Source of the DNA: Macrostomum hystrix
Lineage: Eukaryota; Animalia; Platyhelminthes
Direction: 5' to 3'
Assembly (NCBI GenBank): GCA_950097015.1
Contig: CATNEN010000039.1
Coordinates: 6,882,001 to 6,946,000 of the forward strand
DNA: 64,000 bases
Below, one piece after another: positions 1 to 54,934 of the stretch. The notes under the pieces were generated by a model. The model saw nothing but the letters and a program-made list of their open reading frames with translations. It did no database searches and was not told where the DNA came from. The position numbers were made by a program, and so were the translations under genes. Position 1 is the first letter of the stretch; every line of letters begins with the position of its first letter.

Positions 1-3000
1 CCGCAAGGCCCGTCGTAGCGTCCGCAAGGCCAGAAAGAGCAACAGAAGACGCGCTCGCAAGACCACACGGCAGCTGAAGAAGCGTGCCCGCAAGGCCCGT
101 CGTAGCGTCCGCAAGACAAGAAAGAGCAACAGAAGACGCGCTCGCAAGACGAGACGACAGCAGAAGAAACGTGCCCGCAAAGCTAAGCGAAGCGTCCGCA
201 AGGCCAGAAAGAGCAACAGACGCGCACGCAGGACCAGAAAGACCAACAAAAGAGGCGCTCGCAAGACCAGACGGCAGCAGAAGAAGCGTGCCCGCAAGGC
301 CCGTCGTAGCGTCCGCAAGGCTAGAAAGAGCAACAGAAGACGCGCTCGCAAGACCAGACGGCAGCAGAAGAAGCGTACCAGCAAGGCCCATCGTAGCGTC
401 CGCAAGGCCAGAAAGAGTAACAGAAGACGCGCTCGCAGGACCAGAAAAAGCAACAGAAGAGGCGCTCGCAAGACCAGACGGCAGCAGAAGAAGCGTGCCC
501 GCAAGGCCCGTCGTAGCGTCCGCAAGGCCAGAAAGAGCAACAGAAGACGCGCTCGCAAGACCACACGGCAGCAGAAGAAGCGTGCCCGCAAGGCCCGTCG
601 TAGCGTCCGCAAGACAAGAAAGAGCAACAGAAGACGCGCTCGCAAGACGAGACGACAGCAGAAGAAACGTGCCCGCAAAGCTAGGCGAAGCGTCCGCAAG
701 GCCAGAAAGAGTAACAGACGCGCACGCAGGACCAGAAAGACCAACAAAAGAGGCGCTCGCAAGACCAGACGGCAGCAGAAGAAGCGTGCCCGCAAGGCCC
801 GTCGTAGCGTCCGCAAGGCCAGAAACAGCAACAGAAGACGCGCTCGCAAGACCAGACGGCAGCAGAAGAAGCGTACCAGCAAGGCCCATCGTAGCGTCCG
901 CAAGGCCAGAAAGAGTAACAGAAGACGCGCTCGCAGGACCAGAAAAAGCAACAGAAGAGGCGCTCGCAAGACGAGACGACAGCAGAAGAAACGTGCCCGC
1001 AAAGCTAGGCGAAGCGTCCGCAAGGCCAGAAAGAGCAACAGACGCGCTCGCAAGACCAGAAAGAGCAACAGAAGACGCGCTCGCAAGACCAGACGGCAGC
1101 AGAAGATGCGTGCCCGCAAGGCCCGTCGTAGCGTCCGCAAGGCCAGAAAGAGCAACAGACGCGCTCGCAGGACCAGAAAAAGCAACAGAAGAGGCGCTCG
1201 CAAGACCAGACGGCAGCAGAAGAAGCGCGCCCGCAAGGCCCGTCGTAGCGTCCGCAAGGCTAGAAAGAGCAACAGAAGACGCGCTCGCAAGACCACACGG
1301 CAGCAGAAGAAGCGTGCCCGCAAGGCCCGTCGTAGCGTCCGCAAGACCAGAAAGAGCAACAGACGCGCTCGCAGGACCAGAAAAAGCAACAGAAGAGGCG
1401 CTCGCAAGACCAGACGGCAGCAGAAGAAGCGTGCCCGCAAGGCCCGTCGTAGCGTCCGCAAGGCCAGAAAGAGCAACAGAAGACGCGTCCGCAAGGCCAC
1501 ACGGCAGCAGAAGAAGCGTGCCCGCAAGGCCCGTCGTAGCGTCCGCAAGACCAGAAAGAGCAACAGACGCGCTCGCAGGACCAGAAAAAGCAACAGAAGA
1601 GGCGCTCGCAAGACCAGACGGCAGCTGAAGAAGCGTGCCCGCAAGGCCCGTCGTAGAGTCCGCAAGGCCAGAAAGAGCAACAGACGCGCTCGCAAGACCA
1701 GAAAGAGCAACAGAAGACGCGCTCGCAAGACCAGACGGCAGCTGAAGAAGCGTGCACGCAAGGCCCGTCGTAGTGTCCGCAAGGCCAGAAAGAGTAACAG
1801 AAGACGCGCTCGCAAGAGCAGAAAGAGCAACAAAAGAGGCGCTCGCAAGACCAGAAGGCAGCTGAAGAAGCGTGCCCGCAAGGCCCGTCTTAGCGTCCGC
1901 AAGACCAGAAAGAGCAACAGAAGACGCGCTCGCAAGACGAAACGACAGCAGAAGAAACGTGCCCGCAAATCTAGGCGAAGCGTCCGCAAGGCCAGAAAGA
2001 GCAACAGACGCGCACGCAGGACCAGAAAGACCAACAAAAGAGGCGCTCGCAAGACCAGACGGCAGCAGAAGAAGCGTGCCCGCAAGGCCCGTCGTAGCGT
2101 CCGCAAGGCCAGAAAGAGCAACAGAAGACGCGCTCGCAAGACCAGAAAAAGCAAGACAAGACGCGCTCGCAAGACCAGACGGCAGCTGAAGAAGCGTGCC
2201 CGCAAGGCCCGTCGTAGCGTTCGCAAGGCCAGAAGGAGCAACAGACGCGCTCGCAGGACCAGAAAAAGCAACAGAAGAGGCGCTCGCAAGACCAGACGGC
2301 AGCAGAAGAAGCGTGCCCGCAAGGCCCGTCGTAGCGTCCGCAAGGCCAGAAAGAGCAACAGAAGACGCGCTCGCAAGAGCAGAAAGAGCAACAGAAGACG
2401 CGCTCGCAAGAACAGACGGCAGCAGAAGAAGCGTGCCCGCAAGGCCCGTCGTAGCGTCCGCAAGGCCAGAAAGAGCAACAGAAGACGCGCTCGCAAGACC
2501 AGACGGCAGCTGAAGAAGCGTGCCCGCAAGGCCCGTCGTAGCGTCCGCAAGACAAGAAAGAGCAACAGAAGACGCGCTCGCAAGACGAGACGACAGCAGA
2601 AGAAACGTGCCCGCAAAGCTAGGCGAAGCGTCCGCAAGGCCAGAAAGAGTAACAGACGCGCACGCAGGACCAGAAAGACCAACAAAAGAGGCGCTCGCAA
2701 GACCAGACGGCAGCAGAAGAAGCGTGCCCGCAAGGCCCGTCGTAGCGTCCGCAAGGCCAGAAAGAGCAACAGAAGACGCGCTCGCAAGACCAGACGGCAG
2801 CAGAAGAAGCGTACCAGCAAGGCCCATCGTAGCGTCCGCAAGGCCAGAAAGAGTAACAGAAGACGCGCTCGCAGGACCAGAAAAAGCAACAGAAGAGGCG
2901 CTCGCAAGACCAGACGGCAGCAGAAGAAGCGTGCCCGCAAGGCCCGTCGTAGCGTCCGCAAGGCCAGAAAGAGCAACAGAAGACGCGCTCGCAAGAGCAG

Positions 3001-6000
3001 AAAGAGCAACAGAAGACGCGCTCGCAAGAACAGACGGCAGCAGAAGAAGCGTGCCCGCAAGGCCCGTCGTAGCGTCCGCAAGGCCAGAAAGAGCAACAGA
3101 AGACGCGCTCGCAAGACCAGACGGCAGCTGAAGAAGCGTGCCCGCAAGGCCCGTCGTAGCGTCCGCAAGGCCAGAAAGAGCAACAGAAGACGCGCTCGCA
3201 AGACCACACGGCAGCTGAAGAAGCGTGCCCGCAAGGCCCGTCGTAGCGTCCGCAAGACAAAAAAGAGGAACAGAAGACGCGCTCGCAAGACGAGACGACA
3301 GCAGAAGAAACGTGCCCGCAAAGCTAGGCGAAGCGTCCGCAAGGCCAGAAAGAGCAACAGACGCGCTCGCAGGACCAGAAAAAGCAACAGAAGACGCGCT
3401 CGCAAGACCAGAAAAAGCAACAGAAGACGCGCTCGCAAGACCAGACGGCAGCAGAAGAAGCGTGCCCGCAAGGCCCGTCGTAGCGTCCGCAAGGCCAGAA
3501 AGAGCAACAGAAGACGCGCTCGCAAGACCAGAAGGCAGCTGAAGAAGCGTGCCCGCAAGGCCCGTCGTAGCGTCCGCAAGGCCAGAAAGAGCAACAGAAG
3601 ACGCGCTCGCAAGACCACACGGCAGCTGAAGAAGCGTGCCCGCAAGGCCCGTCGTAGCGTCCGCAAGACAAGAAAGAGCAACAGAAGACGCGCTCGCAAG
3701 ACGAGACGACAGCAGAAGAAACGTGCCCGCAAAGCTAAGCGAAGCGTCCGCAAGGCCAGAAAGAGCAACAGACGCGCACGCAGGACCAGAAAGACCAACA
3801 AAAGAGGCGCTCGCAAGACCAGACGGCAGCAGAAGAAGCGTGCCCGCAAGGCCCGTCGTAGCGTCCGCAAGGCTAGAAAGAGCAACAGAAGACGCGCTCG
3901 CAAGACCAGACGGCAGCAGAAGAAGCGTACCAGCAAGGCCCATCGTAGCGTCCGCAAGGCCAGAAAGAGTAACAGAAGACGCGCTCGCAGGACCAGAAAA
4001 AGCAACAGAAGAGGCGCTCGCAAGACCAGACGGCAGCAGAAGAAGCGTGCCCGCAAGGCCCGTCGTAGCGTCCGCAAGGCCAGAAAGAGCAACAGAAGAC
4101 GCGCTCGCAAGACCACACGGCAGCAGAAGAAGCGTGCCCGCAAGGCCCGTCGTAGCATCCGCAAGGCCAGAAAGAGTAACAGAAGACGCGCTCGCAAGAC
4201 CAGAAAAAGCAACAGAAGACGCGCTCGCAAGACCAGACGGCAGCAGAAGAAGCGTGCCCGCAAGGCCCGTCGTAGCGTCCGCAAGGCCAGAAAGAGCAAC
4301 AGAAGACGCGCTCGCAAGACCAGACGGCAGCAGAAGAAGCGTGCCCGCAAGGCCCGTCGTAGCGTCCGCAAGGCCAGAAAGAGCAACAGACGCGCTCGCA
4401 GGACCAGAAAAAGCAACAGAAGAGGCGCTCGCAAGACCAGACGGCAGCAGAAGAAGCGTACCCGCAAGGCCCGTCGTAGCGTCCGCAAGGCCAGAAAGAG
4501 CAACAGAAGACGCGCTAGCAAGAGCAGAAAGAGCAACAGAAGACGCGCTCGCAAGACCAGACGACAGCAGAAGAAGCGTGCCCGCAAGGCCCGTCGTAGC
4601 GTCCGCAAGGTCAGAAAGAGCAACAGAAGACGCGCTCGCAAGACCAGAAAAAGCAACAGAAGAGGCGCTCGCAAGACCAGACGGCAGCAGAAGAAGCGTG
4701 CCCGCAAGGCCCGTCGTAGCGTCCGCAAGACCAGAAAGAGCAACAGAAGACGCGCTCGCAAGACCACACGGCAGCAGAAAAAGCGTGCCCGCAAGGCCCG
4801 TCGTGGCGTCCGCAAGGCCAGAAAGAGCAACAGAAGACGCGCTCGCAAGACCAGAAGGCAGCTAAAAAAGCGTGCCCGCAAGGCCCGTCGTAGCGTCCGC
4901 AAGGCCAGAAAGAGCAACAGACGCGCTCGCAGGACCAGAAAAAGCAACAGAAGAGGCGCTCGCAAGACCAGACGGCAGCAGAAGAAGCGCGCCCGCAAGG
5001 CCCGTCGTAGCATCCGCAAGGCCAGAAAGAGTAACAGAAGACGCGCTCGCAAGACCAGAAAAAGCAACAGAAGACGCGCTCGCAAGACCAGACGGCAGCA
5101 GAAGAAGCGTGCCCGCAAGGCCCGTCGTAGCGTCCGCAAGGCTAGAAAGAGCAACAGAAGACGCGCTCGCAAGACCAGACGGCAGCAGAAGAAGCGTACC
5201 AGCAAGGCCCATCGTAGCGTCCGCAAGGCCAGAAAGAGTAACAGAAGACGCGCTCGCAGGACCAGAAAAAGCAACAGAAGAGGCGCTCGCAAGACCAGAC
5301 GGCAGCAGAAGAAGCGTGCCCGCAAGGCCCGTCGTAGCGTCCGCAAGGCCAGAAAGAGCAACAGAAGACGCGCTCGCAAGACCACACGGCAGCAGAAGAA
5401 GCGTGCCCGCAAGGCCCGTCGTAGCATCCGCAAGGCCAGAAAGAGTAACAGAAGACGCGCTCGCAAGACCAGAAAAAGCAACAGAAGACGCGCTCGCAAG
5501 ACCAGACGGCAGCAGAAGAAGCGTGCCCGCAAGGCCCGTCGTAGCGTCCGCAAGGCCAGAAAGAGCAACAGAAGACGCGCTCGCAAGACCAGACGGCAGC
5601 AGAAGAAGCGTGCCCGCAAGGCCCGTCGTAGCGTCCGCAAGGCCAGAAAGAGCAACAGACGCGCTCGCAGGACCAGAAAAAGCAACAGAAGAGGCGCTCG
5701 CAAGACCAGACGGCAGCAGAAGAAGCGTACCCGCAAGGCCCGTCGTAGCGTCCGCAAGGCCAGAAAGAGCAACAGAAGACGCGCTAGCAAGAGCAGAAAG
5801 AGCAACAGAAGACGCGCTCGCAAGACCAGACGACAGCAGAAGAAGCGTGCCCGCAAGGCCCGTCGTAGCGTCCGCAAGGTCAGAAAGAGCAACAGAAGAC
5901 GCGCTCGCAGGACCAGAAAAAGCAACAGAAGAGGCGCTCGCAAGACCAGACGGCAGCAGAAGAAGCGTGCCCGCAAGGCCCGTCGTAGCGTCCGCAAGAC

Positions 6001-9000
6001 CAGAAAGAGCAACAGAAGACGCGCTCGCAAGACCACACGGCAGCAGAAAAAGCGTGCCCGCAAGGCCCGTCGTGGCGTCCGCAAGGCCAGAAAGAGCAAC
6101 AGAAGACGCGCTCGCAAGACCAGAAGGCAGCTAAAAAAGCGTGCCCGCAAGGCCCGTCGTAGCGTCCGCAAGGCCAGAAAGAGCAACAGACGCGCTCGCA
6201 GGACCAGAAAAAGCAACAGAAGAGGCGCTCGCAAGACCAGACGGCAGCAGAAGAAGCGCGCCCGCAAGGCCCGTCGTAGCATCCGCAAGGCCAGAAAGAG
6301 TAACAGAAGACGCGCTCGCAAGACCAGAAAAAGCAACAGAAGACGCGCTCGCAAGACCAGACGGCAGCAGAAGAAGCGTGCCCGCAAGGCCCGTCGTAGC
6401 GTCCGCAAGGCCAGAAAGAGCAACAGAAGACGCGCTCGCAAGACCAGACGGCAGCAGAAGAAGCGTGCCCGCAAGGCCCGTCGTAGCGTCCGCAAGGCCA
6501 GAAAGAGCAACAGAAGACGCGCTCGCAAGACCAGACGGCAGCTGAAGAAGCGTGCCCGCAAGGCCCGTCGTAGCGTCCGCAAGGCCAGAAAGAGCAACAG
6601 AAGACGCGCTCGCAAGACCAGAAGGCAGCTGAAGAAGCGTGCCCGCAAGGCCCGTCGTAGCGTCCGCAAGGCCAGAAAGAGCAACAGAAGACGCGCTCGC
6701 AAGACCACACGGCAGCTGAAGAAGCGTGCCCGCAAGGCCCGTCGTAGCGTCCGCAAGACAAGAAAGAGCAACAGAAGACGCGCTCGCAAGACGAGACGAC
6801 AGCAGAAGAAACGTGCCCGCAAAGCTAAGCGAAGCGTCCGCAAGGCCAGAAAGAGCAACAGACGCGCACGCAGGACCAGAAAGACCAACAAAAGAGGCGC
6901 TCGCAAGACCAGACGGCAGCAGAAGAAGCGTGCCCGCAAGGCCCGTCGTAGCGTCCGCAAGGCTAGAAAGAGCAACAGAAGACGCGCTCGCAAGACCAGA
7001 CGGCAGCAGAAGAAGCGTACCAGCAAGGCCCATCGTAGCGTCCGCAAGGCCAGAAAGAGTAACAGAAGACGCGCTCGCAGGACCAGAAAAAGCAACAGAA
7101 GAGGCGCTCGCAAGACCAGACGGCAGCAGAAGAAGCGTGCCCGCAAGGCCCGTCGTAGCGTCCGCAAGGCCAGAAAGAGCAACAGAAGACGCGCTCGCAA
7201 GACCACACGGCAGCAGAAGAAGCGTGCCCGCAAGGCCCGTCGTAGCATCCGCAAGGCCAGAAAGAGTAACAGAAGACGCGCTCGCAAGACCAGAAAAAGC
7301 AACAGAAGACGCGCTCGCAAGACCAGACGGCAGCAGAAGAAGCGTGCCCGCAAGGCCCGTCGTAGCGTCCGCAAGGCCAGAAAGAGCAACAGAAGACGCG
7401 CTCGCAAGACCAGACGGCAGCAGAAGAAGCGTGCCCGCAAGGCCCGTCGTAGCGTCCGCAAGGCCAGAAAGAGCAACAGACGCGCTCGCAGGACCAGAAA
7501 AAGCAACAGAAGAGGCGCTCGCAAGACCAGACGGCAGCAGAAGAAGCGTACCCGCAAGGCCCGTCGTAGCGTCCGCAAGGCCAGAAAGAGCAACAGAAGA
7601 CGCGCTAGCAAGAGCAGAAAGAGCAACAGAAGACGCGCTCGCAAGACCAGACGACAGCAGAAGAAGCGTGCCCGCAAGGCCCGTCGTAGCGTCCGCAAGG
7701 TCAGAAAGAGCAACAGAAGACGCGCTCGCAAGACCAGAAAAAGCAACAGAAGAGGCGCTCGCAAGACCAGACGGCAGCAGAAGAAGCGTGCCCGCAAGGC
7801 CCGTCGTAGCGTCCGCAAGACCAGAAAGAGCAACAGAAGACGCGCTCGCAAGACCACACGGCAGCAGAAAAAGCGTGCCCGCAAGGCCCGTCGTGGCGTC
7901 CGCAAGGCCAGAAAGAGCAACAGAAGACGCGCTCGCAAGACCAGAAGGCAGCTAAAAAAGCGTGCCCGCAAGGCCCGTCGTAGCGTCCGCAAGGCCAGAA
8001 AGAGCAACAGACGCGCTCGCAGGACCAGAAAAAGCAACAGAAGAGGCGCTCGCAAGACCAGACGGCAGCAGAAGAAGCGCGCCCGCAAGGCCCGTCGTAG
8101 CATCCGCAAGGCCAGAAAGAGTAACAGAAGACGCGCTCGCAAGACCAGAAAAAGCAACAGAAGACGCGCTCGCAAGACCAGACGGCAGCAGAAGAAGCGT
8201 GCCCGCAAGGCCCGTCGTAGCGTCCGCAAGGCTAGAAAGAGCAACAGAAGACGCGCTCGCAAGACCAGACGGCAGCAGAAGAAGCGTACCAGCAAGGCCC
8301 ATCGTAGCGTCCGCAAGGCCAGAAAGAGTAACAGAAGACGCGCTCGCAGGACCAGAAAAAGCAACAGAAGAGGCGCTCGCAAGACCAGACGGCAGCAGAA
8401 GAAGCGTGCCCGCAAGGCCCGTCGTAGCGTCCGCAAGGCCAGAAAGAGCAACAGAAGACGCGCTCGCAAGACCACACGGCAGCAGAAGAAGCGTGCCCGC
8501 AAGGCCCGTCGTAGCATCCGCAAGGCCAGAAAGAGTAACAGAAGACGCGCTCGCAAGACCAGAAAAAGCAACAGAAGACGCGCTCGCAAGACCAGACGGC
8601 AGCAGAAGAAGCGTGCCCGCAAGGCCCGTCGTAGCGTCCGCAAGGCCAGAAAGAGCAACAGAAGACGCGCTCGCAAGACCAGACGGCAGCAGAAGAAGCG
8701 TGCCCGCAAGGCCCGTCGTAGCGTCCGCAAGGCCAGAAAGAGCAACAGACGCGCTCGCAGGACCAGAAAAAGCAACAGAAGAGGCGCTCGCAAGACCAGA
8801 CGGCAGCAGAAGAAGCGTACCCGCAAGGCCCGTCGTAGCGTCCGCAAGGCCAGAAAGAGCAACAGAAGACGCGCTAGCAAGAGCAGAAAGAGCAACAGAA
8901 GACGCGCTCGCAAGACCAGACGACAGCAGAAGAAGCGTGCCCGCAAGGCCCGTCGTAGCGTCCGCAAGGTCAGAAAGAGCAACAGAAGACGCGCTCGCAG

Positions 9001-12000
9001 GACCAGAAAAAGCAACAGAAGAGGCGCTCGCAAGACCAGACGGCAGCAGAAGAAGCGTGCCCGCAAGGCCCGTCGTAGCGTCCGCAAGACCAGAAAGAGC
9101 AACAGAAGACGCGCTCGCAAGACCACACGGCAGCAGAAAAAGCGTGCCCGCAAGGCCCGTCGTGGCGTCCGCAAGGCCAGAAAGAGCAACAGAAGACGCG
9201 CTCGCAAGACCAGAAGGCAGCTAAAAAAGCGTGCCCGCAAGGCCCGTCGTAGCGTCCGCAAGGCCAGAAAGAGCAACAGACGCGCTCGCAGGACCAGAAA
9301 AAGCAACAGAAGAGGCGCTCGCAAGACCAGACGGCAGCAGAAGAAGCGCGCCCGCAAGGCCCGTCGTAGCATCCGCAAGGCCAGAAAGAGTAACAGAAGA
9401 CGCGCTCGCAAGACCAGAAAAAGCAACAGAAGACGCGCTCGCAAGACCAGACGGCAGCAGAAGAAGCGTGCCCGCAAGGCCCGTCGTAGCGTCCGCAAGG
9501 CCAGAAAGAGCAACAGAAGACGCGCTCGCAAGACCAGACGGCAGCAGAAGAAGCGTGCCCGCAAGGCCCGTCGTAGCGTCCGCAAGGCCAGAAAGAGCAA
9601 CAGAAGACGCGCTCGCAAGACCAGACGGCAGCTGAAGAAGCGTGCCCGCAAGGCCCGTCGTAGCGTCCGCAAGGCCAGAAAGAGCAACAGAAGACGCGCT
9701 CGCAAGACCACACGGCAGCTGAAGAAGCGTGCCCGCAAGGCCCGTCGTAGCGTCCGTAAGGCCAGAAAGAGCAACAGACGCGCTCGCAAGACCAGAAAGA
9801 GCAACAGAAGACGCGCTCGCAAGACCAGACGGCAGCTGAAGAAGCGTGCCCGCAAGGCCCGTCGTAGCGTCCGCAAGACAAGAAAGAGCAACAGAAGACG
9901 CGCTCGCAAGACGAGACGACAGCAGAAGAAACGTGCCCGCAAAGCTAAGCGAAGCGTCCGCAAGGCCAGAAAGAGCAACAGACGCGCACGCAGGACCAGA
10001 AAGACCAACAGAAGAGGCGCTCGCAAGACCACACGGCAGCAGAAGAAGCGTGCCCGCAAGGCCCGTCGTAGCGTCCGCAAGGCCAGAAAGAGGAACAGAC
10101 GCGCTCGCAAGACCAGAAAGAGCAACAGAAGACGCGCTCGCAAGACCAGACGGCAGCTGAAGAAGCGTGCCCGCAAGGCCCGTCGTAGCGTCCGCAAGGC
10201 CAGAAAGAGCAACAGAAGACGCGCTCGCAAGACGAGACGACAGCAGAAGAAGCGTGCCCGCAAAGCTAGGCGAAGCGTCCGCAAGGCCAGAAAGAGCAAC
10301 AGACGCGCACGCAGGACCAGAAAGACCAACAGAAGAGGCGCTCGCAAGACCACACGGCAGCAGAAGAAGCGTGCCCGCAAGGCCCGTCGTAGCGTCCGCA
10401 AGGACAGAAAGAGTAACACAAGACGCGCTCGCAAGACCAGAAAAAGCAACGGAAGAGGCGCTCGTAAGACCAGACGGCAGCAGAAGAAGCGTGCCCGCAA
10501 GGCCCGTCGTAGCGTCCGCAAGGCCAGAAAGAGCAACAGAAGAAGCGCTCGCAAGACCAGACGACAGCAGAAGAAGCGTGCTCGCAAAGCTAGGCGTAGC
10601 GTCCGCAAGGCCAGAAAGAGCTACAGACGCGCTCGCAAGACCAGAAAGAGCAACAGAAGACGCGCTCGCAAGACCAGACGGCAGCAGAAGAAGCGTGCTC
10701 GCAAAGCTAGGCGTAGCGTCCGCAAGGCCAGAAAGAGCAACAGACGCACTCTCAAGGCCAGAAAGAGCAACAGACGCGCTCGCAAGACCAGACGGCAGCT
10801 GAAGAAGCGTGCCCGCAAGTCCCGTCGTAGCGTCCGCAAGGCCAGAAAGAGCAACAGACGCACTCTCAAGGCCAGAAAGAGCAACAGACGCGCTCGCAAG
10901 ACCAGACGGCAGCTGAAGAAGCGTGCCCGCAAGGCCCGTCGTAGCGTCCGCAAGACCAGAAAGAGCAACAGAAGACGCGCTCGCAAGACCACACGGCAGC
11001 AGAAAAAGCGTGCCCGCAAGGCCCGTCGTGGCGTCCGCAAGGCCAGAAAGAGCAACAGAAGACGCGCTCGCAAGACCAGAAGGCAGCTAAAAAAGCGTGC
11101 CCGCAAGGCCCGTCGTAGCGTCCGCAAGACCAGAAAGAGCAACAGACGCGCTCGCAGGACCAGAAAAAGCAACAGAAGAGGCGCTCGCAAGACCAGACGG
11201 CAGCAGAAGAAGCGCGCCCGCAAGGCCCGTCGTACCGTCCGCAAGGCCAGAAAGAGCAACAGAAGACGCGTCCGCAAGGCCAGAAAGAGCAACAGAAGAC
11301 GCGCTCGCAAGACCACACGGCAGCAGAAGAAGCGTACCCGCAAGGCCCGTCGTAGCATCCGCAAGGCCAGAAAGAGTAACAGAAGACGCGCTCGCAAGAC
11401 CAGAAAAAGCAACAGAAGACGCGCTCGCAAGACCAGACGGCAGCAGAAGAAGCGTGCCCGCAAGGCCCGTCGTAGCGTCCGCAAGGCCAGAAAGAGCAAC
11501 AAAAGACGCGCTCGCAAGACCAGACGGCAGCTGAAGAAGCGTGCCCGCAAGGCCCGTCGTAGCGTCCGCAAGGCCAGAAAGAGCAACAGAAGACGCGCTC
11601 GCAAGACCACACGGCAGCTGAAGAAGCGTGCCCGCAAGGCCCGTCGTAGCGTCCGCAAGGCCAGAAAGAGCAACAGAAGACGCGCTCGCAAGACCACACG
11701 GCAGCTGAAGAAGCGTGCCCGCAAGGCCCGTCGTAGCGTCCGTAAGGCCAGAAAGAGCAACAGACGCGCTCGCAAGACCAGAAAGAGCAACAGAAGACGC
11801 GCTCGCAAGACCAGACGGCAGCTGAAGAAGCGTGCCCGCATGGCCCGTCGTAGCGTCCGCAAGGCCAGAAAGAGCAACAGAAGACGCGCTGGCAAGACGA
11901 GACGACAGCAGAAGAAGCGTGCCCGCAAAGCTAGGCGAAGCGTCCGCAAGGCCAGAAAGAGCAACAGACGCGCACGCAGGACCAGAAAGACCAACAGAAG

Positions 12001-13210
12001 AGGCGCTCGCAAGACCACACGGCAGCAGAAGAAGCGTGCCCGCAAGGCCCGTCGTAGCGTCCGCAAGGCCAGAAAGAGGAACAGACGCGCTCGCAAGACC
12101 AGAAAGAGCAACAGAAGACGCGCTCGCAAGACCAGACGGCAGCTGAAGAAGCGTGCCCGCAAGGCCCGTCGTAGCGTCCGCAAGGCCAGAAAGAGCAACA
12201 GAAGACGCGCTCGCAAGACGAGACGACAGCAGAAGAAGCGTGCCCGCAAAGCTAGGCGAAGCGTCCGCAACGCCAGAAAGAGCAACAGACGCGCACGCAG
12301 GACCAGAAAGACCAACAGAAGAGGCGCTCGCAAGACCACACGGCAGCAGAAGAAGCGTGCCCGCAAGGCCCGTCGTAGCGTCCGCAAGGACAGAAAGAGT
12401 AACACAAGACGCGCTCGCAAGACCAGAAAAAGCAACAGAAGAGGCGCTCGTAAGACCAGACGGCAGCAGAAGAAGCGTGCCCGCAAGGCCCGTCGTAGCG
12501 TCCGCAAGGCCAGAAAGAGCAACAGAAGAAGCGCTCGCAAGACCAGACGACAGCAGAAGAAGCGTGCTCGCAAAGCTAGGCGTAGCGTCCGCAAGGCCAG
12601 AAAGAGCAACAGACGCGCTCGCAAGACCAGAAAGAGCAACAGAAGACGCGCTCGCAAGACCAGACGGCAGCAGAAGAAGCGTGCTCGCAAAGCTAGGCGT
12701 AGCGTCCGCAAGGCCAGAAAGAGCAACAGACGCACTCTCAAGGCCAGAAAGAGCAACAGACGCGCTCGCAAGACCAGACGGCAGCTGAAGAAGCGTGCCC
12801 GCAAGTCCCGTCGTAGCGTCCGCAAGGCCAGAAAGAGCAACAGACGCACTCTCAAGGCCAGAAAGAGCAACAGACGCGCTCGCAAGACCAGACGGCAGCT
12901 GAAGAAGCGTGCCCGCAAAGCTAGGCGTAGCGTCCGCAAGACCAGACAGAGCAACAGAAGACGCGCTCGCAAGACCAGACGTCAGCAGAAGAAGCCTGCC
13001 CGCAAGGCTCGTCGTAGCGCCCGCAAGACCAGAAAGAGCAACAAAAGACGCGCTCGCAAGACCAGACGTCAGCAGAAGAAGCCTGCCCGCAAGGCTCGTC
13101 GTAGCGTTCGCAAGGCCAGAAAGAGCAACAGACGCGCTCGCAAGACCAGAAAGAGCAACAGACGCGCTCGCAAGACCAGAAAGAGCAACAGAAGACGCGC
13201 TCGAAAGACT
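1..13210 (+). repeat. Coding tandem repeat: 87-bp (29-aa) core unit plus 33/30-bp sub-units, with higher-order duplications of ~1269, ~3090 and ~1986 bp
   Basis: Consensus RARKARRSVRKARKSNRRRARKTRRQQKK. Identical or near-identical alternative-frame ORFs recur at 3636/6726, 4872/7962 and 6141/9231 (offset 3090), 3873/5142 (1269) and 10167/12153 (1986). Confidence 0.95.
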
Positions 13211-14047
13211 AGAAGACATGAGATGAAGCGGGCTCGGAGGACTAGAAGACAGGAGAAGAAGCGCGCTCGCACGACTAGAAGACAGGAGAATAAGAAGGCT
13301 CGGACGACTAGAAGGCTGGAGAAGAAGCGCGTCGGCACATCCACTGGACAGGAGAAGCGTGTTCGGAGGATAAGAAGACAGGATAAAAAACGCGATTACA
13401 ATACAGCACGCCGTATACGTGATGTGGTCAATGCCAGTAGGACAGGACCTGCTGTTGGAAGACCCATTCCGAGAACAAAGAAAGCAGTTGATAGAAAGAG
13501 CGAACAGAAAATTACGCGAAGTCGCGACGAGGAGCGCGTTGTTCGACCTGTTTCAAATGTTAGCAGAGGTAGTCCAAAGGCGTCCTCGGGATATCGCCGG
13601 CAGTCTGAGAGACGCGATGCTCCAAGGCGTTCTTCGGAACAGGTTTCTCCAAAACGTCGCCAGGAGACCCAGCGGCGGGGGAAACCAAAGAGTTCGATTC
13701 CGGTTCAGGCAGCTCTTGTCAGCCGGAGACTTGAGGAGCCAAAGCGTTCACCGCCGGTCGTGAAGCCAGTAGTGAACCAGGATTCGAAGGAAGCTCGGCG
13801 CCGACCAACCGTTCGCAAGGCCAGTTCGAGGCGAAAGTCAGCTCGCTCTGCTTCTAGACGGCACAGAAGACGCCCGGACTCGAGAAGGGCCGCTAGGCGG
13901 AGCGATTCCACTCAGGCCGAGTCGTCGTCATCGGAGTCGTCTGATTGGTTTAGCACTGAAGAAATCATCGACTTCGACAGCGGCAGTAGCTTCAGCCTTG
14001 ATGGTGCAGCCGAGATCGTTGTCGAGTCTGACAGCTTCTCGGAGTGA
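2..14047 (+). CDS. Giant Arg/Lys-rich tandem-repeat protein, 5'-truncated by the window (>=4681 aa). About 4400 aa of a 29-aa repeat, then a basic non-repetitive linker and an acidic C-terminal tail. Candidate KR-rich adhesive/structural protein
   Basis: Frame 2 reads through from base 2 to TGA at 14045-14047. The ATG at 1106 is only a K->M variant inside a repeat. Unit indels are multiples of 3, many unit variants are synonymous (GCC/GCT, AGC/AGT, AAG/AAA), and the repeat decays in frame into unique sequence followed by AT-rich 3' UTR-like DNA. Confidence 0.85.
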   Translation, partial: RKARRSVRKARKSNRRRARKTTRQLKKRARKARRSVRKTRKSNRRRARKTRRQQKKRARKAKRSVRKARKSNRRARRTRKTNKRGARKTRRQQKKRARKARRSVRKARKSNRRRARKTRRQQKKRTSKAHRSVRKARKSNRRRARRTRKSNRRGARKTRRQQKKRARKARRSVRKARKSNRRRARKTTRQQKKRARKARRSVRKTRKSNRRRARKTRRQQKKRARKARRSVRKARKSNRRARRTRKTNKRGARKTRRQQKKRARKARRSVRKARNSNRRRARKTRRQQKKRTSKAHRSVRKARKSNRRRARRTRKSNRRGARKTRRQQKKRARKARRSVRKARKSNRRARKTRKSNRRRARKTRRQQKMRARKARRSVRKARKSNRRARRTRKSNRRGARKTRRQQKKRARKARRSVRKARKSNRRRARKTTRQQKKRARKARRSVRKTRKSNRRARRTRKSNRRGARKTRRQQKKRARKARRSVRKARKSNRRRVRKATRQQKKRARKARRSVRKTRKSNRRARRTRKSNRRGARKTRRQLKKRARKARRRVRKARKSNRRARKTRKSNRRRARKTRRQLKKRARKARRSVRKARKSNRRRARKSRKSNKRGARKTRRQLKKRARKARLSVRKTRKSNRRRARKTKRQQKKRARKSRRSVRKARKSNRRARRTRKTNKRGARKTRRQQKKRARKARRSVRKARKSNRRRARKTRKSKTRRARKTRRQLKKRARKARRSVRKARRSNRRARRTRKSNRRGARKTRRQQKKRARKARRSVRKARKSNRRRARKSRKSNRRRARKNRRQQKKRARKARRSVRKARKSNRRRARKTRRQLKKRARKARRSVRKTRKSNRRRARKTRRQQKKRARKARRSVRKARKSNRRARRTRKTNKRGARKTRRQQKKRARKARRSVRKARKSNRRRARKTRRQQKKRTSKAHRSVRKARKSNRRRARRTRKSNRRGARKTRRQQKKRARKARRSVRKARKSNRRRARKSRKSNRRRARKNRRQQKKRARKARRSVRKARKSNRRRARKTRRQLKKRARKARRSVRKARKSNRRRARKTTRQLKKRARKARRSVRKTKKRNRRRARKTRRQQKKRARKARRSVRKARKSNRRARRTRKSNRRRARKTRKSNRRRARKTRRQQKKRARKARRSVRKARKSNRRRARKTRRQLKKRARKARRSVRKARKSNRRRARKTTRQLKKRARKARRSVRKTRKSNRRRARKTRRQQKKRARKAKRSVRKARKSNRRARRTRKTNKRGARKTRRQQKKRARKARRSVRKARKSNRRRARKTRRQQKKRTSKAHRSVRKARKSNRRRARRTRKSNRRGARKTRRQQKKRARKARRSVRKARKSNRRRARKTTRQQKKRARKARRSIRKARKSNRRRARKTRKSNRRRARKTRRQQKKRARKARRSVRKARKSNRRRARKTRRQQKKRARKARRSVRKARKSNRRARRTRKSNRRGARKTRRQQKKRTRKARRSVRKARKSNRRRASKSRKSNRRRARKTRRQQKKRARKARRSVRKVRKSNRRRARKTRKSNRRGARKTRRQQKKRARKARRSVRKTRKSNRRRARKTTRQQKKRARKARRGVRKARKSNRRRARKTRRQLKKRARKARRSVRKARKSNRRARRTRKSNRRGARKTRRQQKKRARKARRSIRKARKSNRRRARKTRKSNRRRARKTRRQQKKRARKARRSVRKARKSNRRRARKTRRQQKKRTSKAHRSVRKARKSNRRRARRTRKSNRRGARKTRRQQKKRARKARRSVRKARKSNRRRARKTTRQQKKRARKARRSIRKARKSNRRRARKTRKSNRRRARKTRRQQKKRARKARRSVRKARKSNRRRARKTRRQQKKRARKARRSVRKARKSNRRARRTRKSNRRGARKTRRQQKKRTRKARRSVRKARKSNRRRASKSRKSNRRRARKTRRQQKKRARKARRSVRKVRKSNRRRARRTRKSNRRGARKTRRQQKKRARKARRSVRKTRKSNRRRARKTTRQQKKRARKARRGVRKARKSNRRRARKTRRQLKKRARKARRSVRKARKSNRRARRTRKSNRRGARKTRRQQKKRARKARRSIRKARKSNRRRARKTRKSNRRRARKTRRQQKKRARKARRSVRKARKSNRRRARKTRRQQKKRARKARRSVRKARKSNRRRARKTRRQLKKRARKARRSVRKARKSNRRRARKTRRQLKKRARKARRSVRKARKSNRRRARKTTRQLKKRARKARRSVRKTRKSNRRRARKTRRQQKKRARKAKRSVRKARKSNRRARRTRKTNKRGARKTRRQQKKRARKARRSVRKARKSNRRRARKTRRQQKKRTSKAHRSVRKARKSNRRRARRTRKSNRRGARKTRRQQKKRARKARRSVRKARKSNRRRARKTTRQQKKRARKARRSIRKARKSNRRRARKTRKSNRRRARKTRRQQKKRARKARRSVRKARKSNRRRARKTRRQQKKRARKARRSVRKARKSNRRARRTRKSNRRGARKTRRQQKKRTRKARRSVRKARKSNRRRASKSRKSNRRRARKTRRQQKKRARKARRSVRKVRKSNRRRARKTRKSNRRGARKTRRQQKKRARKARRSVRKTRKSNRRRARKTTRQQKKRARKARRGVRKARKSNRRRARKTRRQLKKRARKARRSVRKARKSNRRARRTRKSNRRGARKTRRQQKKRARKARRSIRKARKSNRRRARKTRKSNRRRARKTRRQQKKRARKARRSVRKARKSNRRRARKTRRQQKKRTSKAHRSVRKARKSNRRRARRTRKSNRRGARKTRRQQKKRARKARRSVRKARKSNRRRARKTTRQQKKRARKARRSIRKARKSNRRRARKTRKSNRRRARKTRRQQKKRARKARRSVRKARKSNRRRARKTRRQQKKRARKARRSVRKARKSNRRARRTRKSNRRGARKTRRQQKKRTRKARRSVRKARKSNRRRASKSRKSNRRRARKTRRQQKKRARKARRSVRKVRKSNRRRARRTRKSNRRGARKTRRQQKKRARKARRSVRKTRKSNRRRARKTTRQQKKRARKARRGVRKARKSNRRRARKTRRQLKKRARKARRSVRKARKSNRRARRTRKSNRRGARKTRRQQKKRARKARRSIRKARKSNRRRARKTRKSNRRRARKTRRQQKKRARKARRSVRKARKSNRRRARKTRRQQKKRARKARRSVRKARKSNRRRARKTRRQLKKRARKARRSVRKARKSNRRRARKTTRQLKKRARKARRSVRKARKSNRRARKTRKSNRRRARKTRRQLKKRARKARRSVRKTRKSNRRRARKTRRQQKKRARKAKRSVRKARKSNRRARRTRKTNRRGARKTTRQQKKRARKARRSVRKARKRNRRARKTRKSNRRRARKTRRQLKKRARKARRSVRKARKSNRRRARKTRRQQKKRARKARRSVRKARKSNRRARRTRKTNRRGARKTTRQQKKRARKARRSVRKDRKSNTRRARKTRKSNGRGARKTRRQQKKRARKARRSVRKARKSNRRSARKTRRQQKKRARKARRSVRKARKSYRRARKTRKSNRRRARKTRRQQKKRARKARRSVRKARKSNRRTLKARKSNRRARKTRRQLKKRARKSRRSVRKARKSNRRTLKARKSNRRARKTRRQLKKRARKARRSVRKTRKSNRRRARKTTRQQKKRARKARRGVRKARKSNRRRARKTRRQLKKRARKARRSVRKTRKSNRRARRTRKSNRRGARKTRRQQKKRARKARRTVRKARKSNRRRVRKARKSNRRRARKTTRQQKKRTRKARRSIRKARKSNRRRARKTRKSNRRRARKTRRQQKKRARKARRSVRKARKSNKRRARKTRRQLKKRARKARRSVRKARKSNRRRARKTTRQLKKRARKARRSVRKARKSNRRRARKTTRQLKKRARKARRSVRKARKSNRRARKTRKSNRRRARKTRRQLKKRARMARRSVRKARKSNRRRAGKTRRQQKKRARKARRSVRKARKSNRRARRTRKTNRRGARKTTRQQKKRARKARRSVRKARKRNRRARKTRKSNRRRARKTRRQLKKRARKARRSVRKARKSNRRRARKTRRQQKKRARKARRSVRNARKSNRRARRTRKTNRRGARKTTRQQKKRARKARRSVRKDRKSNTRRARKTRKSNRRGARKTRRQQKKRARKARRSVRKARKSNRRSARKTRRQQKKRARKARRSVRKARKSNRRARKTRKSNRRRARKTRRQQKKRARKARRSVRKARKSNRRTLKARKSNRRARKTRRQLKKRARKSRRSVRKARKSNRRTLKARKSNRRARKTRRQLKKRARKARRSVRKTRQSNRRRARKTRRQQKKPARKARRSARKTRKSNKRRARKTRRQQKKPARKARRSVRKARKSNRRARKTRKSNRRARKTRKSNRRRARKTRRHEMKRARRTRRQEKKRARTTRRQENKKARTTRRLEKKRVGTSTGQEKRVRRIRRQDKKRDYNTARRIRDVVNASRTGPAVGRPIPRTKKAVDRKSEQKITRSRDEERVVRPVSNVSRGSPKASSGYRRQSERRDAPRRSSEQVSPKRRQETQRRGKPKSSIPVQAALVSRRLEEPKRSPPVVKPVVNQDSKEARRRPTVRKASSRRKSARSASRRHRRRPDSRRAARRSDSTQAESSSSESSDWFSTEEIIDFDSGSSFSLDGAAEIVVESDSFSE

Positions 14048-14356
14048 TCTCACAGTTAAGCAAATTCGCTTAATTGCAGATGTTTAAAACAAACTATTGG
14101 CTAAAACTTCTGGTTTTTAACGCTAAATATGCGACAATGACAATTTCGCAGCTGTTATTTCCTTCCCAATAACTTAATAGACTGTTGATTTGGTGGTTGG
14201 TGCCCAGACACAAAGTGCTTTTGAGCCTGATCCAATTAAACCAATTAAAAAATTGCTTATTAAAAAAAGAAGTCAGTTTTGTCTTACAAGTGTGCTAGAA
14301 TAACGGCATACTGACTGAATACTAGTTTATGGAGCATAATTTATACAATTAACTGC

Positions 14357-14362
14357 AATAAA
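14357..14362 (+). promoter_or_regulatory. Candidate polyadenylation signal (AATAAA) of the KR-repeat gene
   Basis: AATAAA ~310 nt after the stop codon in AT-rich sequence. An ATTAAA also occurs near 14235. Confidence 0.35.
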
Positions 14363-15001
14363 TATGGCCTAGAAAGATAGAAGGCCAAATATTATCTTTT
14401 TGTTTCTGCATACCAAAAACTCATTGAAATATTTCTGAATTCCTTCTTTCTAAATCCGAATGTAACCAAAAGTAGTAATTGCAACACTTTTTAAATTGAA
14501 AGCTATATGGCTACAGGAAATAGTGAGATATAAAAGAAGTGTTTTGATGTAGCTGAGACAACGAAATACTCTGTTGAAGCCTACTGGCCAGTAACTAGCA
14601 TTTACTGCGTTAAATGATTTAAATTTGAATTGGCGCCATAACTTTTCTTGTACAGTATAGACTATAGGTTTTTATACCTTTAAATTAAGTACAGGACAGA
14701 AATTTTCTATATTGCTATATATACTACTTAAAAATTTCTTAAAGTATAGAACGTGTGAATTAGGACAATTGCTGCAATCATGCAAATTTAGAGCCTGAAA
14801 GTGGAACTGAACAATTGCAGATTTGGGCCAATTCAGATAAATTAGTTTAAAGCAGTTAACCTAAGAGTTTGCCTCGAGTCACTTCGTTTATTTTTTGCTC
14901 GTCTGTACAGAACAGGAAAACGTAAAATCCGTGAAGAATCCGTTTTGAGTTTTCAATAAGGTACGAGTCCGCGATAAAAAGGCTAGATAGCGCCAACAGT
15001 T

Positions 15002-15077
15002 TGGTGAGTGCTTGGGGGGAGTCGAACCCCCTTGTCTTGGGCCCGTAACAAGAATCTTACCAATAGATCACAAGCGA
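15002..15077 (-). pseudogene. tRNA-like element (degenerate tRNA gene or isolated SINE head)
   Basis: Minus strand GCTTGTGATCTATTGGTAAGATTCTTGTTACGGGCCCAAGACAAGGGGGTTCGACTCCCCCCAAGCACTCACCA. D stem ATCT/AGAT, anticodon stem TCTTG/CAAGA with a 9-nt loop, T arm GGGGG-TTCGACT-CCCCC, acceptor only 5 bp (GCTTG/CAAGC), T5 tract ~20 nt downstream. Confidence 0.55.
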
Positions 15078-15410
15078 AGTAACCGTTTAGCATAGCTAGC
15101 CCAGGAACTCAAAGTTTTTTGTGCCTATTTATTATTTCGGAGGAGGCAGCTGAGAATGGCGAAATTTTTTCAGAAGCTTACAAAAAATCCAGATAAATTT
15201 GCGTCATCTACTGAAAGTAGAAATATTAACATTCTTATAATCTAAATTTATAACTTTGTGCTGAACAATACAATTTACTGCTGCATCTGATTAAATTCGA
15301 AAATGCCCCTGTGATACGGACATAAGTCACATCCTTGCTATCCGAAAGCAAGTGAAATGAAAGAATGTCGTTTTTTTCAAATGTACGCTCGTACTTTCTG
15401 CTCGATTATA

Positions 15411-54306: not shown

Positions 54307-54934
54307 TAGGAATTCGGGTCCTGGGTTGTAATAATTCGATAACAAACTGGAGATGAGGCCTATAGGTTGGGCCTATAGGTTGGGCCTATAGAACACATAA
54401 TAGAAGCGAACTCACCAAGACTTCCTACACAAGCACAGAAGCCAAAGTTCTCTTAAAGAACAGAAAAAAATCGAGCGCTGAGCAGAGATCAAAACGACAA
54501 CCTGACCGACCTTCCAGCCACACTTGGCCCAGGTGCGACTTTGAAATGTAGTTTATGTATTTAATAGCCAGTTAAGTTTGCTATCTTGGCTTCAAGCCAG
54601 CATCAACTCCAATAGTGTTGGAAATTGGCGGCAGTTTGTCAGATAACAGCTCAGATAAGATACAATGTAAGCGTGAGTAACATGGCAAAGCACCAGTGCC
54701 CACAGAAATAGTACCGCCGCTATCAACAACTAATTGACTGCCGTATCTTACCTGGGCCTCTTCCTTACAAGAGCTCAATGAGCTCAAACAGCTCAGGTTG
54801 AGGTCGCGGCTTTGTGGCCAAACGTTTGAGCACATTTAACCGAGGTTCCTCGGTAAAAAATGTGCGCTCATTATACTGAGAATTTCAGTGTGTACAGTTA
54901 CAACCGACTGTGGTAACTTGGCCATTGTTAATAA

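What the first reader, a model, noticed from the sequence alone, without database searches (positions are those of the whole stretch)
2..13210. Hidden 7+11+11 coiled-coil register: uncharged residues form one helical stripe
In RARKARRSVRKARKSNRRRARKTRRQQKK the small/uncharged residues at 2,5,9,12,16,20,23,27 (A,A,V,A,N,A,T,Q) are spaced 3-4-3-4-4-3-4-4. That is 29 residues per 8 turns, or 3.625 residues/turn, the pitch of an essentially unsupercoiled alpha-helix. The recurrent hydrophobic substitutions (Q->L in RQLKK, V->I in SIRK, TLKARK) land on these core positions. Unit indels are mostly 11 or 10 aa, which preserve helical phase. Inference: an amphipathic, Ala-cored helical bundle coated in R/K, up to ~650 nm long if continuous (4400 x 0.15 nm). 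It would probably fold only when neutralised by a polyanion, making it a charge-triggered fibre rather than a random polycation.
Basis: partly seen in the sequence, partly recalled or inferred. Interest (0 to 1): 0.88.

Follow-up and report, generated by a model that had tools for sequence, protein, structure and literature searches.

The report
Flatworm glue protein's giant charged tail
This stretch encodes the huge arginine/lysine-rich tail of a known flatworm glue protein (Macrostomum hystrix adhesion protein 1). Its uncharged residues do recur every 3.6 positions, as in an alpha-helix, but nothing shows that the helices bundle into a coiled coil.

Summary
The frame from window 2 to 14047 is open and is transcribed and spliced. 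It encodes a 29/39/40-residue Arg/Lys repeat whose non-basic residues recur with a period of 3.60-3.62, far above residue shuffles.

The gene is already known: it is Macrostomum hystrix adhesion protein 1 (Mhtx-ap1, GenBank OK245467). The published probe primers match exactly and give the published 499-bp amplicon. The domain order is KR array, ShK, C-lectin, EGF, VWD, C8, TIL, about 16-17 EGF, KR array, as in Mlig-ap1. In the literature this is the cohesive polycation of the flatworm's temporary glue, blocked by heparin.

The helix reading is partly supported:
- AlphaFold2 folds five units as one helix (pLDDT 96), and the N-terminal 11-mer array likewise (pLDDT 93).
- The 3.6 period follows from a short-range rule of 1-2 neutral then 2-3 basic residues. 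Shuffling the order of those runs reproduces it (P about 0.2), so the specific 7+11+11 register adds nothing.
- The stripe is Ala/Ser/Thr/Asn/Gln, not hydrophobic, and its flanks are all cationic.
- Orthologous KR regions elsewhere use Gly or Pro spacers.
- The oligomer prediction gave no verdict.

The scan noted this same stretch once more (s1-844511) and other giant polycation genes elsewhere in this genome.

The parts
2..13210 (+). In-window part (4,403 aa) of the C-terminal Lys/Arg-rich (KR) array of Mhtx-ap1. The units are 29, 39, 40 and rarely 38 aa. The array begins upstream at window -2704 and totals 5,305 aa.
   Evidence: Open frame and composition. Unit census. 3.6 periodicity. RNA-derived contigs cover the start of the array.
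6377..6811 (+). Longest run of five consecutive 29-aa units. This is the segment folded with AlphaFold2.
   Evidence: One search gives the coordinates. predicts one helix over residues 2-144 with mean pLDDT 96.1.
3454..9710 (+). Perfect higher-order tandem duplication of period 3,090 bp (1,030 aa). Copy A is 3454-6620 and copy B is 6544-9710, with a 100% identical run of 3,167 bp.
   Evidence: It is either a very recent expansion or an assembly duplication, so the array length is uncertain by about 1,030 aa.
13211..14044 (+). Non-repeat C-terminal tail of about 280 aa. It starts with degenerate RRQEKK-type units. Its last 48 aa (13901-14044) are strongly acidic and Ser-rich; the last 60 aa hold 14 Asp+Glu against 7 Lys+Arg. 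It has no Pfam domain and no homologue in the searches run.
   Evidence: It is single-copy in the genome.
14045..14047 (+). Stop codon TGA of Mhtx-ap1.
14357..14362 (+). AATAAA, a candidate poly(A) signal about 310 nt after the stop.
   Evidence: Seven runs each hold the same 0.61 share of the sampled words of 13202-15200, which would fit transcripts that end near 14.4 kb.

Best explanation
Window 2-14047 is most of the last exon of Macrostomum hystrix adhesion protein 1 (Mhtx-ap1). This is the cohesive, polycationic component of the flatworm's duo-gland temporary glue.

The exon starts at about window -3181. It encodes three calcium-binding EGF domains, then a 5,305-aa Lys/Arg array, then a tail of about 280 aa with an acidic end.

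The whole gene reads: 11-mer KR array of 2,667 aa, two ShK domains, C-type lectin, EGF, VWD, C8, TIL/TILa, about 16-17 EGF domains interrupted by a short Pro-rich KR decamer array, then this array. The total is roughly 10,000 aa, about 80% of it polycation.

The array obeys a strict short-range rule of 1-2 neutral residues followed by 2-3 basic residues. The mean cycle is 3.60 residues and there is almost no Pro or Gly.

What is shown: in any helical state all neutral residues sit on one stripe of about 150 degrees, and Arg/Lys cover the other 210 degrees.

What is inferred: the chain is kept from folding by charge repulsion when it is not neutralised. It becomes a stiff, multivalent helical rod when polyanions neutralise it. 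Candidate polyanions are the glycocalyx, glycans on ap2, or a granule counter-ion. Such a rod could bridge several polyanion chains at once, which would give cohesion. A secreted small polyanion or heparin would compete this off.

It is not an autonomous coiled coil.
For: Identity:
- The published Mhtx-ap1 probe primers match L002 4208-4231 (+) and 4686-4706 (-) with no mismatch. The amplicon is 499 bp, the published expected length.
- The start of the published transcript (11-mer KR plus ShK) reads the same as the end of the upstream ORF, by my own reading of the supplement.
- Pfam finds ShK, Lectin_C, VWD, C8, TIL, TILa and EGF_CA in the published ap1 order.

Expression:
- Contigs of three runs skip seven GT..AG introns and join the EGF exons to the array exon.

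Coding:
- 0 stops against 31-161 in the other + frames, and every repeat period is a multiple of 3.
- The non-synonymous to synonymous ratio among distinct variants is 0.33-0.59, and 56% of amino-acid changes keep the charge class against 40% expected.
- The gene is single-copy.

Helix compatibility:
- Peak at 3.615, power 59 against a shuffle maximum of 2.6.
- Basic runs are 2 (1,126 times) or 3 (292 times), and 4 only once.
- AlphaFold2 gives one helix for each array, pLDDT 96 and 93.

Function, from papers:
- KR regions of Mlig-ap1 bind negatively charged sugars. Heparin, chondroitin sulfate and fondaparinux abolish attachment and remove ap1 from footprints. Added cations block release (PMC6410801).
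- ap1 RNAi in M. hystrix reduces attachment, and in situ signal lies in the tail plate (PMC8621496).

Precedent:
- In mycobacterial HBHA, Lys/Ala repeats without Pro gain a nascent helix on heparin binding, while Pro-containing repeats do not (PMC3293801).
Against: - No experiment shows a helix. AlphaFold2 without an alignment readily draws long helices for K/R/A/Q-rich low-complexity sequence and ignores charge repulsion.
- The 3.6 period is reproduced by shuffling run order (P = 0.08-0.20), so it may be a by-product of a charge-spacing rule.
- Orthologous or analogous KR regions are not helix-friendly. This is my reading of short published sequences: M. tuba QGRRPRRSRK, M. lignano SRKPRRKNRKSRKP (56 copies), Minona ileanae (GRK)n, and this gene's own middle array RRRQPKRPST.
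- The signal peptide and 5' end were not determined.
- The polyanion partner in M. hystrix is unknown.
Confidence: 0.6

Rival explanations
1. Permanently disordered polycation. The KR array never folds. The 3.6 period is an accidental average of a charge-spacing rule (XBBX or XBBBX) set by polyanion binding, translation or protease avoidance. Cohesion comes from coacervate-like charge pairing alone.
For: - The run-order shuffle null is not rejected.
- Other flatworms do the same job with (GRK)n or Pro-containing decamers.
- The same protein carries a Pro-rich KR array.
- The net charge is about +18 per 29 residues.
Against: - Pro and Gly are nearly excluded from 8,000 aa of the two large arrays: 2 Pro and 44 Gly in the first 4,400 residues of the C-terminal array, and 16 Pro and 14 Gly in 2,667 residues of the N-terminal array.
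- Both arrays average 3.60-3.65.
- Unit lengths are 11, 29 and 40, which are near-integer numbers of helical turns.
- M. spirale and M. poznaniense use 7-mers.
- AlphaFold2 confidence is above 93.
Confidence: 0.27
2. Ala-cored amphipathic helices with a 7+11+11 (29/8) register pack side by side into an unsupercoiled multi-helix bundle or fibre once polyanions screen the charge.
For: - The stripe is nearly straight, with an array-wide period of 3.615.
- Q->L and V->I substitutions fall on the stripe.
- The ap1 part of M. lignano footprints looks fibrous (PMC6410801).
- Ala-based helix packing and hendecad coiled coils are known; this rests on my own knowledge.
Against: - There is no hydrophobic core. 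In the window's first 4,400 residues Leu is 0.8%, Ile 0.2% and Val 2.8%.
- All flanking positions are cationic, so there is no attraction between helices.
- The particular order of 3s and 4s is not better than shuffled order.
- Pure 29-mer runs are at most 5 units long.
- Helicity is not conserved in orthologues.
Confidence: 0.1
3. Polyprotein. The array is cut in the secretory pathway at its many RXXR or dibasic sites into short cationic peptides that act as antimicrobials or surface primers.
For: Dibasic and RXXR-like sites occur in every unit. This follows directly from the sequence.
Against: - Antibodies against KR peptides label vesicle cores and footprints as a structured component in M. 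lignano (PMC6410801).
- Trimming the basic residues would leave nothing but 1-2 neutral residues.
- No spacer or propeptide logic is visible.
Confidence: 0.03

Closest known systems
Mlig-ap1 (Macrostomum lignano adhesion protein 1, GenBank MH586844), KR-regions A-C
   Same: - The architecture is the same: KR arrays at both ends and a C-lectin, VWD, C8, TIL core with about 17 calcium-binding EGF domains.
- It is the same gene family; this locus is the M. hystrix orthologue, Mhtx-ap1.
- One M. lignano repeat peptide (KNNKRRVRKARKNN, 25 copies) resembles RRSVRKARKSN here.
   Different: - This gene is about twice as long, roughly 10,000 aa against 5,407, with about 8,100 aa of KR against more than 3,600.
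- The papers describe the M. lignano arrays as Gly/Arg/Lys-rich, and one abundant unit contains Pro. Here the spacers are Ala/Ser/Thr/Asn/Gln with almost no Gly or Pro.
- I could not obtain the full Mlig-ap1 sequence to compare periodicity.
Mile-ap3 and Tmed-ap3 (separate GRK-repeat cohesive proteins of Minona ileanae and Theama mediterranea)
   Same: They are secreted polycations that form the electron-dense vesicle core and play the same proposed cohesive and release-sensitive role.
   Different: They are stand-alone proteins built of (GRK)n, with period 3 and Gly spacers. They are not helix-compatible and are not fused to the lectin/VWD/EGF core.
Heparin-binding Lys/Ala repeats of mycobacterial HBHA, and Cardin-Weintraub-type heparin-binding motifs
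   Same: These are basic doublets or triplets separated by small neutral residues. Pro-free Lys/Ala repeats gain nascent helix on heparin binding (PMC3293801).
   Different: - They are tens of residues long, not thousands.
- Strict XBBXBX and XBBBXXBX motifs are rare here, 5 and 12 hits against 1,126 XBBX.
- Here the basic residues cover two-thirds of the helix rather than one face.
Hendecad or 11-mer amphipathic helices (right-handed or straight coiled coils; apolipoprotein, alpha-synuclein and LEA-type 11-mers that fold on binding)
   Same: Repeat lengths of 11, 29 and 40 give 3.63-3.67 residues per turn, and folding is plausibly coupled to binding a partner surface.
   Different: In those families the narrow face is hydrophobic and drives lipid binding or core packing. 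Here it is Ala or polar, and the functional face is the cationic one. This comparison rests on my own knowledge, not on a test.
Gel-forming mucins, von Willebrand factor and sea-star Sfp1 (VWD-C8-TIL proteins)
   Same: They share the VWD-C8-TIL module with EGF domains in a giant secreted protein with huge single-exon repeat arrays.
   Different: The repeat arrays here are polycationic rather than O-glycosylated Pro/Thr/Ser.

Membership tests
Flatworm adhesion protein 1 (ap1) | Core order of C-type lectin, VWD, C8, TIL, followed by many calcium-binding EGF domains | tested here: met
   Pfam hits in genomic order: Lectin_C (L002 48-245 and 955-1233), EGF+VWD, VWD end, C8, TIL+TILa, EGF_CA/EGF_3. 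About 16 six-Cys EGF patterns were counted exon by exon, plus one before VWD.
Flatworm adhesion protein 1 (ap1) | Large Lys/Arg-rich repeat regions at the N- and C-terminal sides of the core | tested here: met
   N-terminal array of 2,667 aa, C-terminal array of 5,305 aa and a short middle array, all on one strand. RNA contigs and the published transcript link them to the core.
Flatworm adhesion protein 1 (ap1) | Identity with the published M. hystrix ap1 transcript and probe | tested here: met
   Both published primers match exactly, 499 bp apart as published.
Flatworm adhesion protein 1 (ap1) | Expression in adhesive gland cells of the tail plate, and loss of attachment on RNAi | not testable with these tools
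   PMC8621496 reports both for Mhtx-ap1, using the probe that maps here. Here I show only that the gene is transcribed and spliced.
Flatworm adhesion protein 1 (ap1) | N-terminal signal peptide | tested here: inconclusive
   The 5' end was not resolved. One hydrophobic Met-start candidate lies at window -20942, with no RNA evidence.
Coiled coil / helical bundle | Periodicity of 3.5-3.67 residues in the core positions | tested here: met
   3.615 over the whole array and 3.60 locally. Unit harmonics are 29/8, 40/11 and 39/11. The run-order null is not rejected (P 0.08-0.20).
Coiled coil / helical bundle | Hydrophobic residues (Leu, Ile, Val, Met) at the core positions | tested here: not met
   Stripe positions are A, A, S/V, A, S/N, A, T, Q/Q(L). 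In the window's first 4,400 residues Leu is 0.8%, Ile 0.2% and Val 2.8%.
Coiled coil / helical bundle | Compatible or complementary charges on the positions flanking the core | tested here: not met
   Every flanking position is Arg or Lys, and Asp occurs twice and Glu not at all in the window's first 4,400 array residues.
Coiled coil / helical bundle | Evidence of self-association | tested here: inconclusive
   Four copies of 87 aa scored ipSAE 0.00. The tool states that this is no evidence either way.
Cardin-Weintraub heparin-binding motifs | XBBXBX or XBBBXXBX patterns | tested here: not met
   5 and 12 matches in 5,305 aa, against 1,126 XBBX and 291 XBBBX. The array works like a glycosaminoglycan-binding polycation but does not use the canonical motifs.

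The most novel reading that the evidence does not exclude
In M. hystrix the two giant KR arrays of ap1 (about 8,000 aa) could be charge-gated structural elements. They would be disordered or condensed in the vesicle. On meeting polyanionic glycans they would snap into amphipathic helical rods some 0.4-0.8 micrometres long, whose Ala stripes zip together into fibres. The small anionic release factor would reverse this. A coil-helix-bundle transition would then be the physical switch of temporary adhesion.
Probability: 0.1. Interest if true: 0.75.

Novelty: already known. Interest (0 to 1): 0.35.

Why it matters
The authors who study flatworm temporary adhesion call the function of the ap1 Lys/Arg regions 'enigmatic', and they could not assemble these regions in M. 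hystrix from short reads (PMC8621496).

This locus gives the complete arrays. It shows that they are far larger than in M. lignano, and it exposes a strict charge grammar with an alpha-helical mean period.

That turns a vague 'low-complexity polycation' into a testable structural hypothesis: helix on neutralisation, acting as a multivalent bridging rod. Short synthetic peptides could check it, and the result bears on the design of reversible underwater adhesives.

This refines a known system. It is not a new kind of system.

Tried and rejected
Searches that found nothing:
- Tail within the whole ORF, tail alone against 1.84 billion representatives, and the array region. These searches see compositionally biased sequence poorly.
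- Searching with the EGF part returned only fibrillin-like proteins. The one M. lignano hit, P0026, has no KR region and is not ap1.
- The protein atlas gave only scores below 0.8, so no lead.

Sources that did not help:
- The supplement of the M. lignano paper holds the KR alignments only as images, so I could not run the periodicity test on Mlig-ap1.

Predictions without a verdict:
- Complex prediction with four copies of three units scored 0.00, 'no answer'. It is not counted for or against binding.

Rejected readings:
- A non-coding satellite whose open frame comes only from low T content. The other frames carry 31-161 stops, the frame continues through EGF domains and a unique tail, and spliced RNA contigs cover it.
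- My early guesses of a cnidarian origin or a sperm protamine-like protein. The domain content and the primer match rule them out.

Not done or not resolved:
- The signal peptide and first exon were not resolved.
- The spliced gene model was searched exon by exon by reference only.
Full report
**Observation.** The + frame that starts at window 2 is open to the TGA at 14045-14047. The two other + frames carry 161 and 31 stops in the first 13.2 kb. Tandem Repeats Finder reports periods of 87, 114, 117, 120, 204, 207, 231, 321, 324 and 411 bp for this array, all multiples of three. The translation is 40% Arg and 20% Lys, with Ala, Ser, Thr, Gln, Asn and Val as nearly the only other residues. Pro occurs twice in the 4,400 in-window residues. 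Only about 45% of units are 29-mers. The rest are 40-mers (37 units), 39-mers (38 units) and a few 38-mers. Runs of pure 29-mers never exceed five units.

**What the frame belongs to.** I fetched the 30 kb upstream of the window from the same contig.
- The frame stays open to window -3205. Directly before the array it encodes three calcium-binding EGF domains.
- Further upstream on the same strand lie exons with EGF domains around a short Pro-rich polycationic decamer array (RRRQPKRPST), then TIL and TILa, C8, VWD plus EGF, and a split C-type lectin domain.
- Beyond these lies a second giant open frame of 2,830 aa. It is made of the 11-mer ARKARKSTKRR and ends in two ShK domains.
- Earlier notes of this scan on other parts of the genome spoke of a Macrostomum flatworm and of flatworm glue proteins. 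That led me to the adhesion literature.
- Mlig-ap1 of M. lignano is described with exactly this layout: Lys/Arg regions at both ends, and a core of C-type lectin, VWD-C8-TIL and 17 calcium-binding EGF modules (PMC6410801).
- The supplement of PMC8621496 lists the M. hystrix ap1 transcript and its probe primers. Both primers match locus L002 without mismatch, 499 bp apart, which is the published amplicon length.
- By my reading, the published transcript start (11-mer KR units running into the ShK domain) is the end of the upstream ORF.
- The locus is therefore Mhtx-ap1 (OK245467), and the genome is M. hystrix or something indistinguishable from it at this gene.

**Expression and structure.**
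- Contigs of three public runs, laid on L002 2000-7999, skip seven GT..AG introns: 2141/2427, 2799/3143, 3285/3377, 4106/4197, 4734/4833, 6094/6262 and 6484/6819. They must therefore derive from RNA.
- One contig joins the two preceding EGF exons to the array exon, and another runs into the first KR units. The collapsed repeat shows very high summed depth.
- The last exon thus starts near window -3181 and carries about 5,740 codons.
- The array and the tail are single-copy in the genome. The N-terminal array is the only other weak match.
- Among repeat units, distinct non-synonymous variants are under-represented per site (ratio 0.33-0.59). Of the amino-acid changes, 56% keep the basic or non-basic class, against 40% expected from random single-base changes.
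- By adding up exons I estimate a protein of roughly 10,000 aa. The first exon and signal peptide were not found.

**The periodicity claim.** A Fourier transform of the non-basic indicator over the 5,305-aa array has its dominant peak at 3.615 residues, power 59. The largest peak in 200 residue shuffles is 2.6. Averaged over 58-aa windows the peak is at 3.60. At unit level:
- The 29-mer has 11 non-basic positions, not 8. Its strongest harmonic is 29/8 = 3.625, with resultant 0.68. All 11 positions fall within about 150 degrees of arc on such a helix.
- The 40-mer peaks at 40/11 = 3.636, the 39-mer at 3.545 and the 38-mer at 3.455.
- Random placement of the same number of neutral residues reaches these values with P of about 0.002 or less.
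- The array obeys a very strict local rule. Basic runs are 2 long (1,126 times) or 3 long (292 times), rarely 1 (57 times), and 4 only once. Neutral runs are 1 long (843 times) or 2 long (626 times). The mean cycle is 3.597.
- If I keep these runs and shuffle only their order within a unit, the observed signal is reached in 20%, 17%, 8% and 15% of trials for the 29-, 39-, 40- and 38-mers.

So the 3.6 period is real and alpha-helix-like. The particular '7+11+11' order carries no extra information, and parsing the unit as ARK-initiated modules of 10, 8 and 11 residues is equally valid. The 11-aa insertions keep the phase. The 10-aa insertions shift the local period towards a heptad-like 3.55 rather than preserving it.

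**Structure prediction.** AlphaFold2 without an alignment folds five consecutive 29-mers as one helix over residues 2-144, with mean pLDDT 96.1. It folds 145 aa of the N-terminal 11-mer array as one helix with pLDDT 93.1. This agrees with the composition: good helix formers, and almost no Pro or Gly in about 8,000 residues. However, such predictions are known to favour long helices for this kind of sequence and they do not weigh charge repulsion. Four copies of three units gave an interface score of 0.00. The tool itself calls this no evidence either way.

**Comparative evidence.** I could not obtain the Mlig-ap1 protein (the supplement shows images only). Short published sequences still allow a look, by my own reading of them.
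- M. lignano KR peptides are SRKPRRKNRKSRKP (56 copies, Pro every 10 residues) and KNNKRRVRKARKNN (25 copies, similar to RRSVRKARKSN here).
- The N-terminal KR region is a 7-mer KKSRKHN in M. spirale and ARKHDKK in M. poznaniense, period 3.5.
- It is a Pro/Gly decamer QGRRPRRSRK in M. tuba, and SRK-type with a period near 3 in M. pusillum.
- In Minona ileanae the KR part is a separate protein made of (GRK)n.
- Helix-compatible 7- and 11-residue units therefore recur, but helix-hostile versions do the same job. The conserved property is alternating short basic runs, not helicity.

**Mechanism.**
- Shown in the literature for the orthologue: ap1 and ap2 are secreted from adhesive gland vesicles. 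In M. ileanae, knock-down of the KR protein ap3 leaves vesicles without the electron-dense core. Heparin, desulfated heparin oligosaccharides, chondroitin sulfate and fondaparinux abolish attachment and remove the fibrous ap1 periphery of footprints. Free Lys or Arg, Mg2+ or a KR peptide block release.
- Shown for M. hystrix: in situ signal in the tail plate, and reduced attachment after ap1 RNAi.
- Inferred here: the M. hystrix arrays become amphipathic helices when neutralised. Arg/Lys then cover about 210 degrees of the surface, so one rod can hold several polyanion chains at once and bridge them. As a helix the array carries about 4 positive charges per nm. By my own estimate this is similar to heparin-like glycans.
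- Precedent: HBHA, whose Pro-free Lys/Ala repeats gain nascent helix on heparin binding while Pro-containing repeats cannot.
- The acidic, Ser-rich last 48 residues of the tail could pair with KR arrays of neighbouring molecules. This is speculation.

**Comparison and novelty.** The entity is a published gene of a published family, so it is already known. [quoted passage not shown]
- the complete arrays in this species;
- their size, about twice that of M. lignano;
- the strict run grammar;
- the alpha-helical mean period.

**Caveats.**
- A perfect 3,090-bp tandem duplication (3454-6620 = 6544-9710) may be an assembly artefact and affects the length estimate.
- Repeat units are not independent observations, so the unit-level tests matter more than the whole-array power.
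- My translations of short sequences from supplements were done by eye.
- The spliced model was examined exon by exon only.

Noticed in passing
window 3454-9710: There is a perfect tandem duplication of a 3,090-bp (1,030-aa) higher-order unit inside the array, with a 3,167-bp run at 100% identity. It is either a very recent expansion or an assembly duplication.
   Followed up: partly
L003 1525-10000 (window -18475 to -9986), + strand: This is a second giant polycationic array of the same gene: 2,667 aa of the 11-mer ARKARKSTKRR. It also peaks near 3.6, is also predicted as one helix, and ends in two ShK domains.
   Followed up: yes
L002 about 5000-5400 (window about -5000 to -4600), + strand: A short third polycationic array, (RRRQPKRPST)n of about 125 aa, is inserted between EGF domains. 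It is Pro-rich and cannot be helical. RNA assemblies break inside it.
   Followed up: partly
window 13901-14044: The protein ends in a strongly acidic, Ser-rich patch; the last 60 aa hold 14 Asp+Glu against 7 Lys+Arg. It is the only anionic part of an otherwise extreme polycation, and it might pair with KR arrays.
   Followed up: no
window 24216-61121: The rest of the window is a dense field of unrelated minisatellites with units of 12-60 bp. One is a 16-bp unit repeated about 449 times at 47114-54307, and another is a 22-bp unit repeated about 100 times at 36172-38393. Strand composition skew is strong, and no coding signal was examined.
   Followed up: no
L004 (window -27252 to -24119): Another minisatellite is open in all three minus-strand frames for about 1,000 codons. 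It is most likely an artefact of the repeat, not a gene.
   Followed up: no
L002 7706-7817 (window about -2294 to -2183): A run labelled as another organism (X9, organism C) holds a 117-nt contig of the array with an in-frame AGA insertion at L002 7796. This suggests a close relative with an in-frame variant of the same repeat.
   Followed up: no
L002 4401 to 6969: Contigs in three runs show a non-canonical joint (CG..AG, skipping 2,567 bases, with only 21 letters on the shorter side). It is probably a mis-join between similar EGF-coding stretches rather than a splice.
   Followed up: no
window -20942 (L004/L003), + strand: A Met-start hydrophobic peptide (MMCHCPTAIIIILLLLILILLC...) lies 2.5 kb upstream of the N-terminal array. 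It could be the signal-peptide exon or something unrelated.
   Followed up: no
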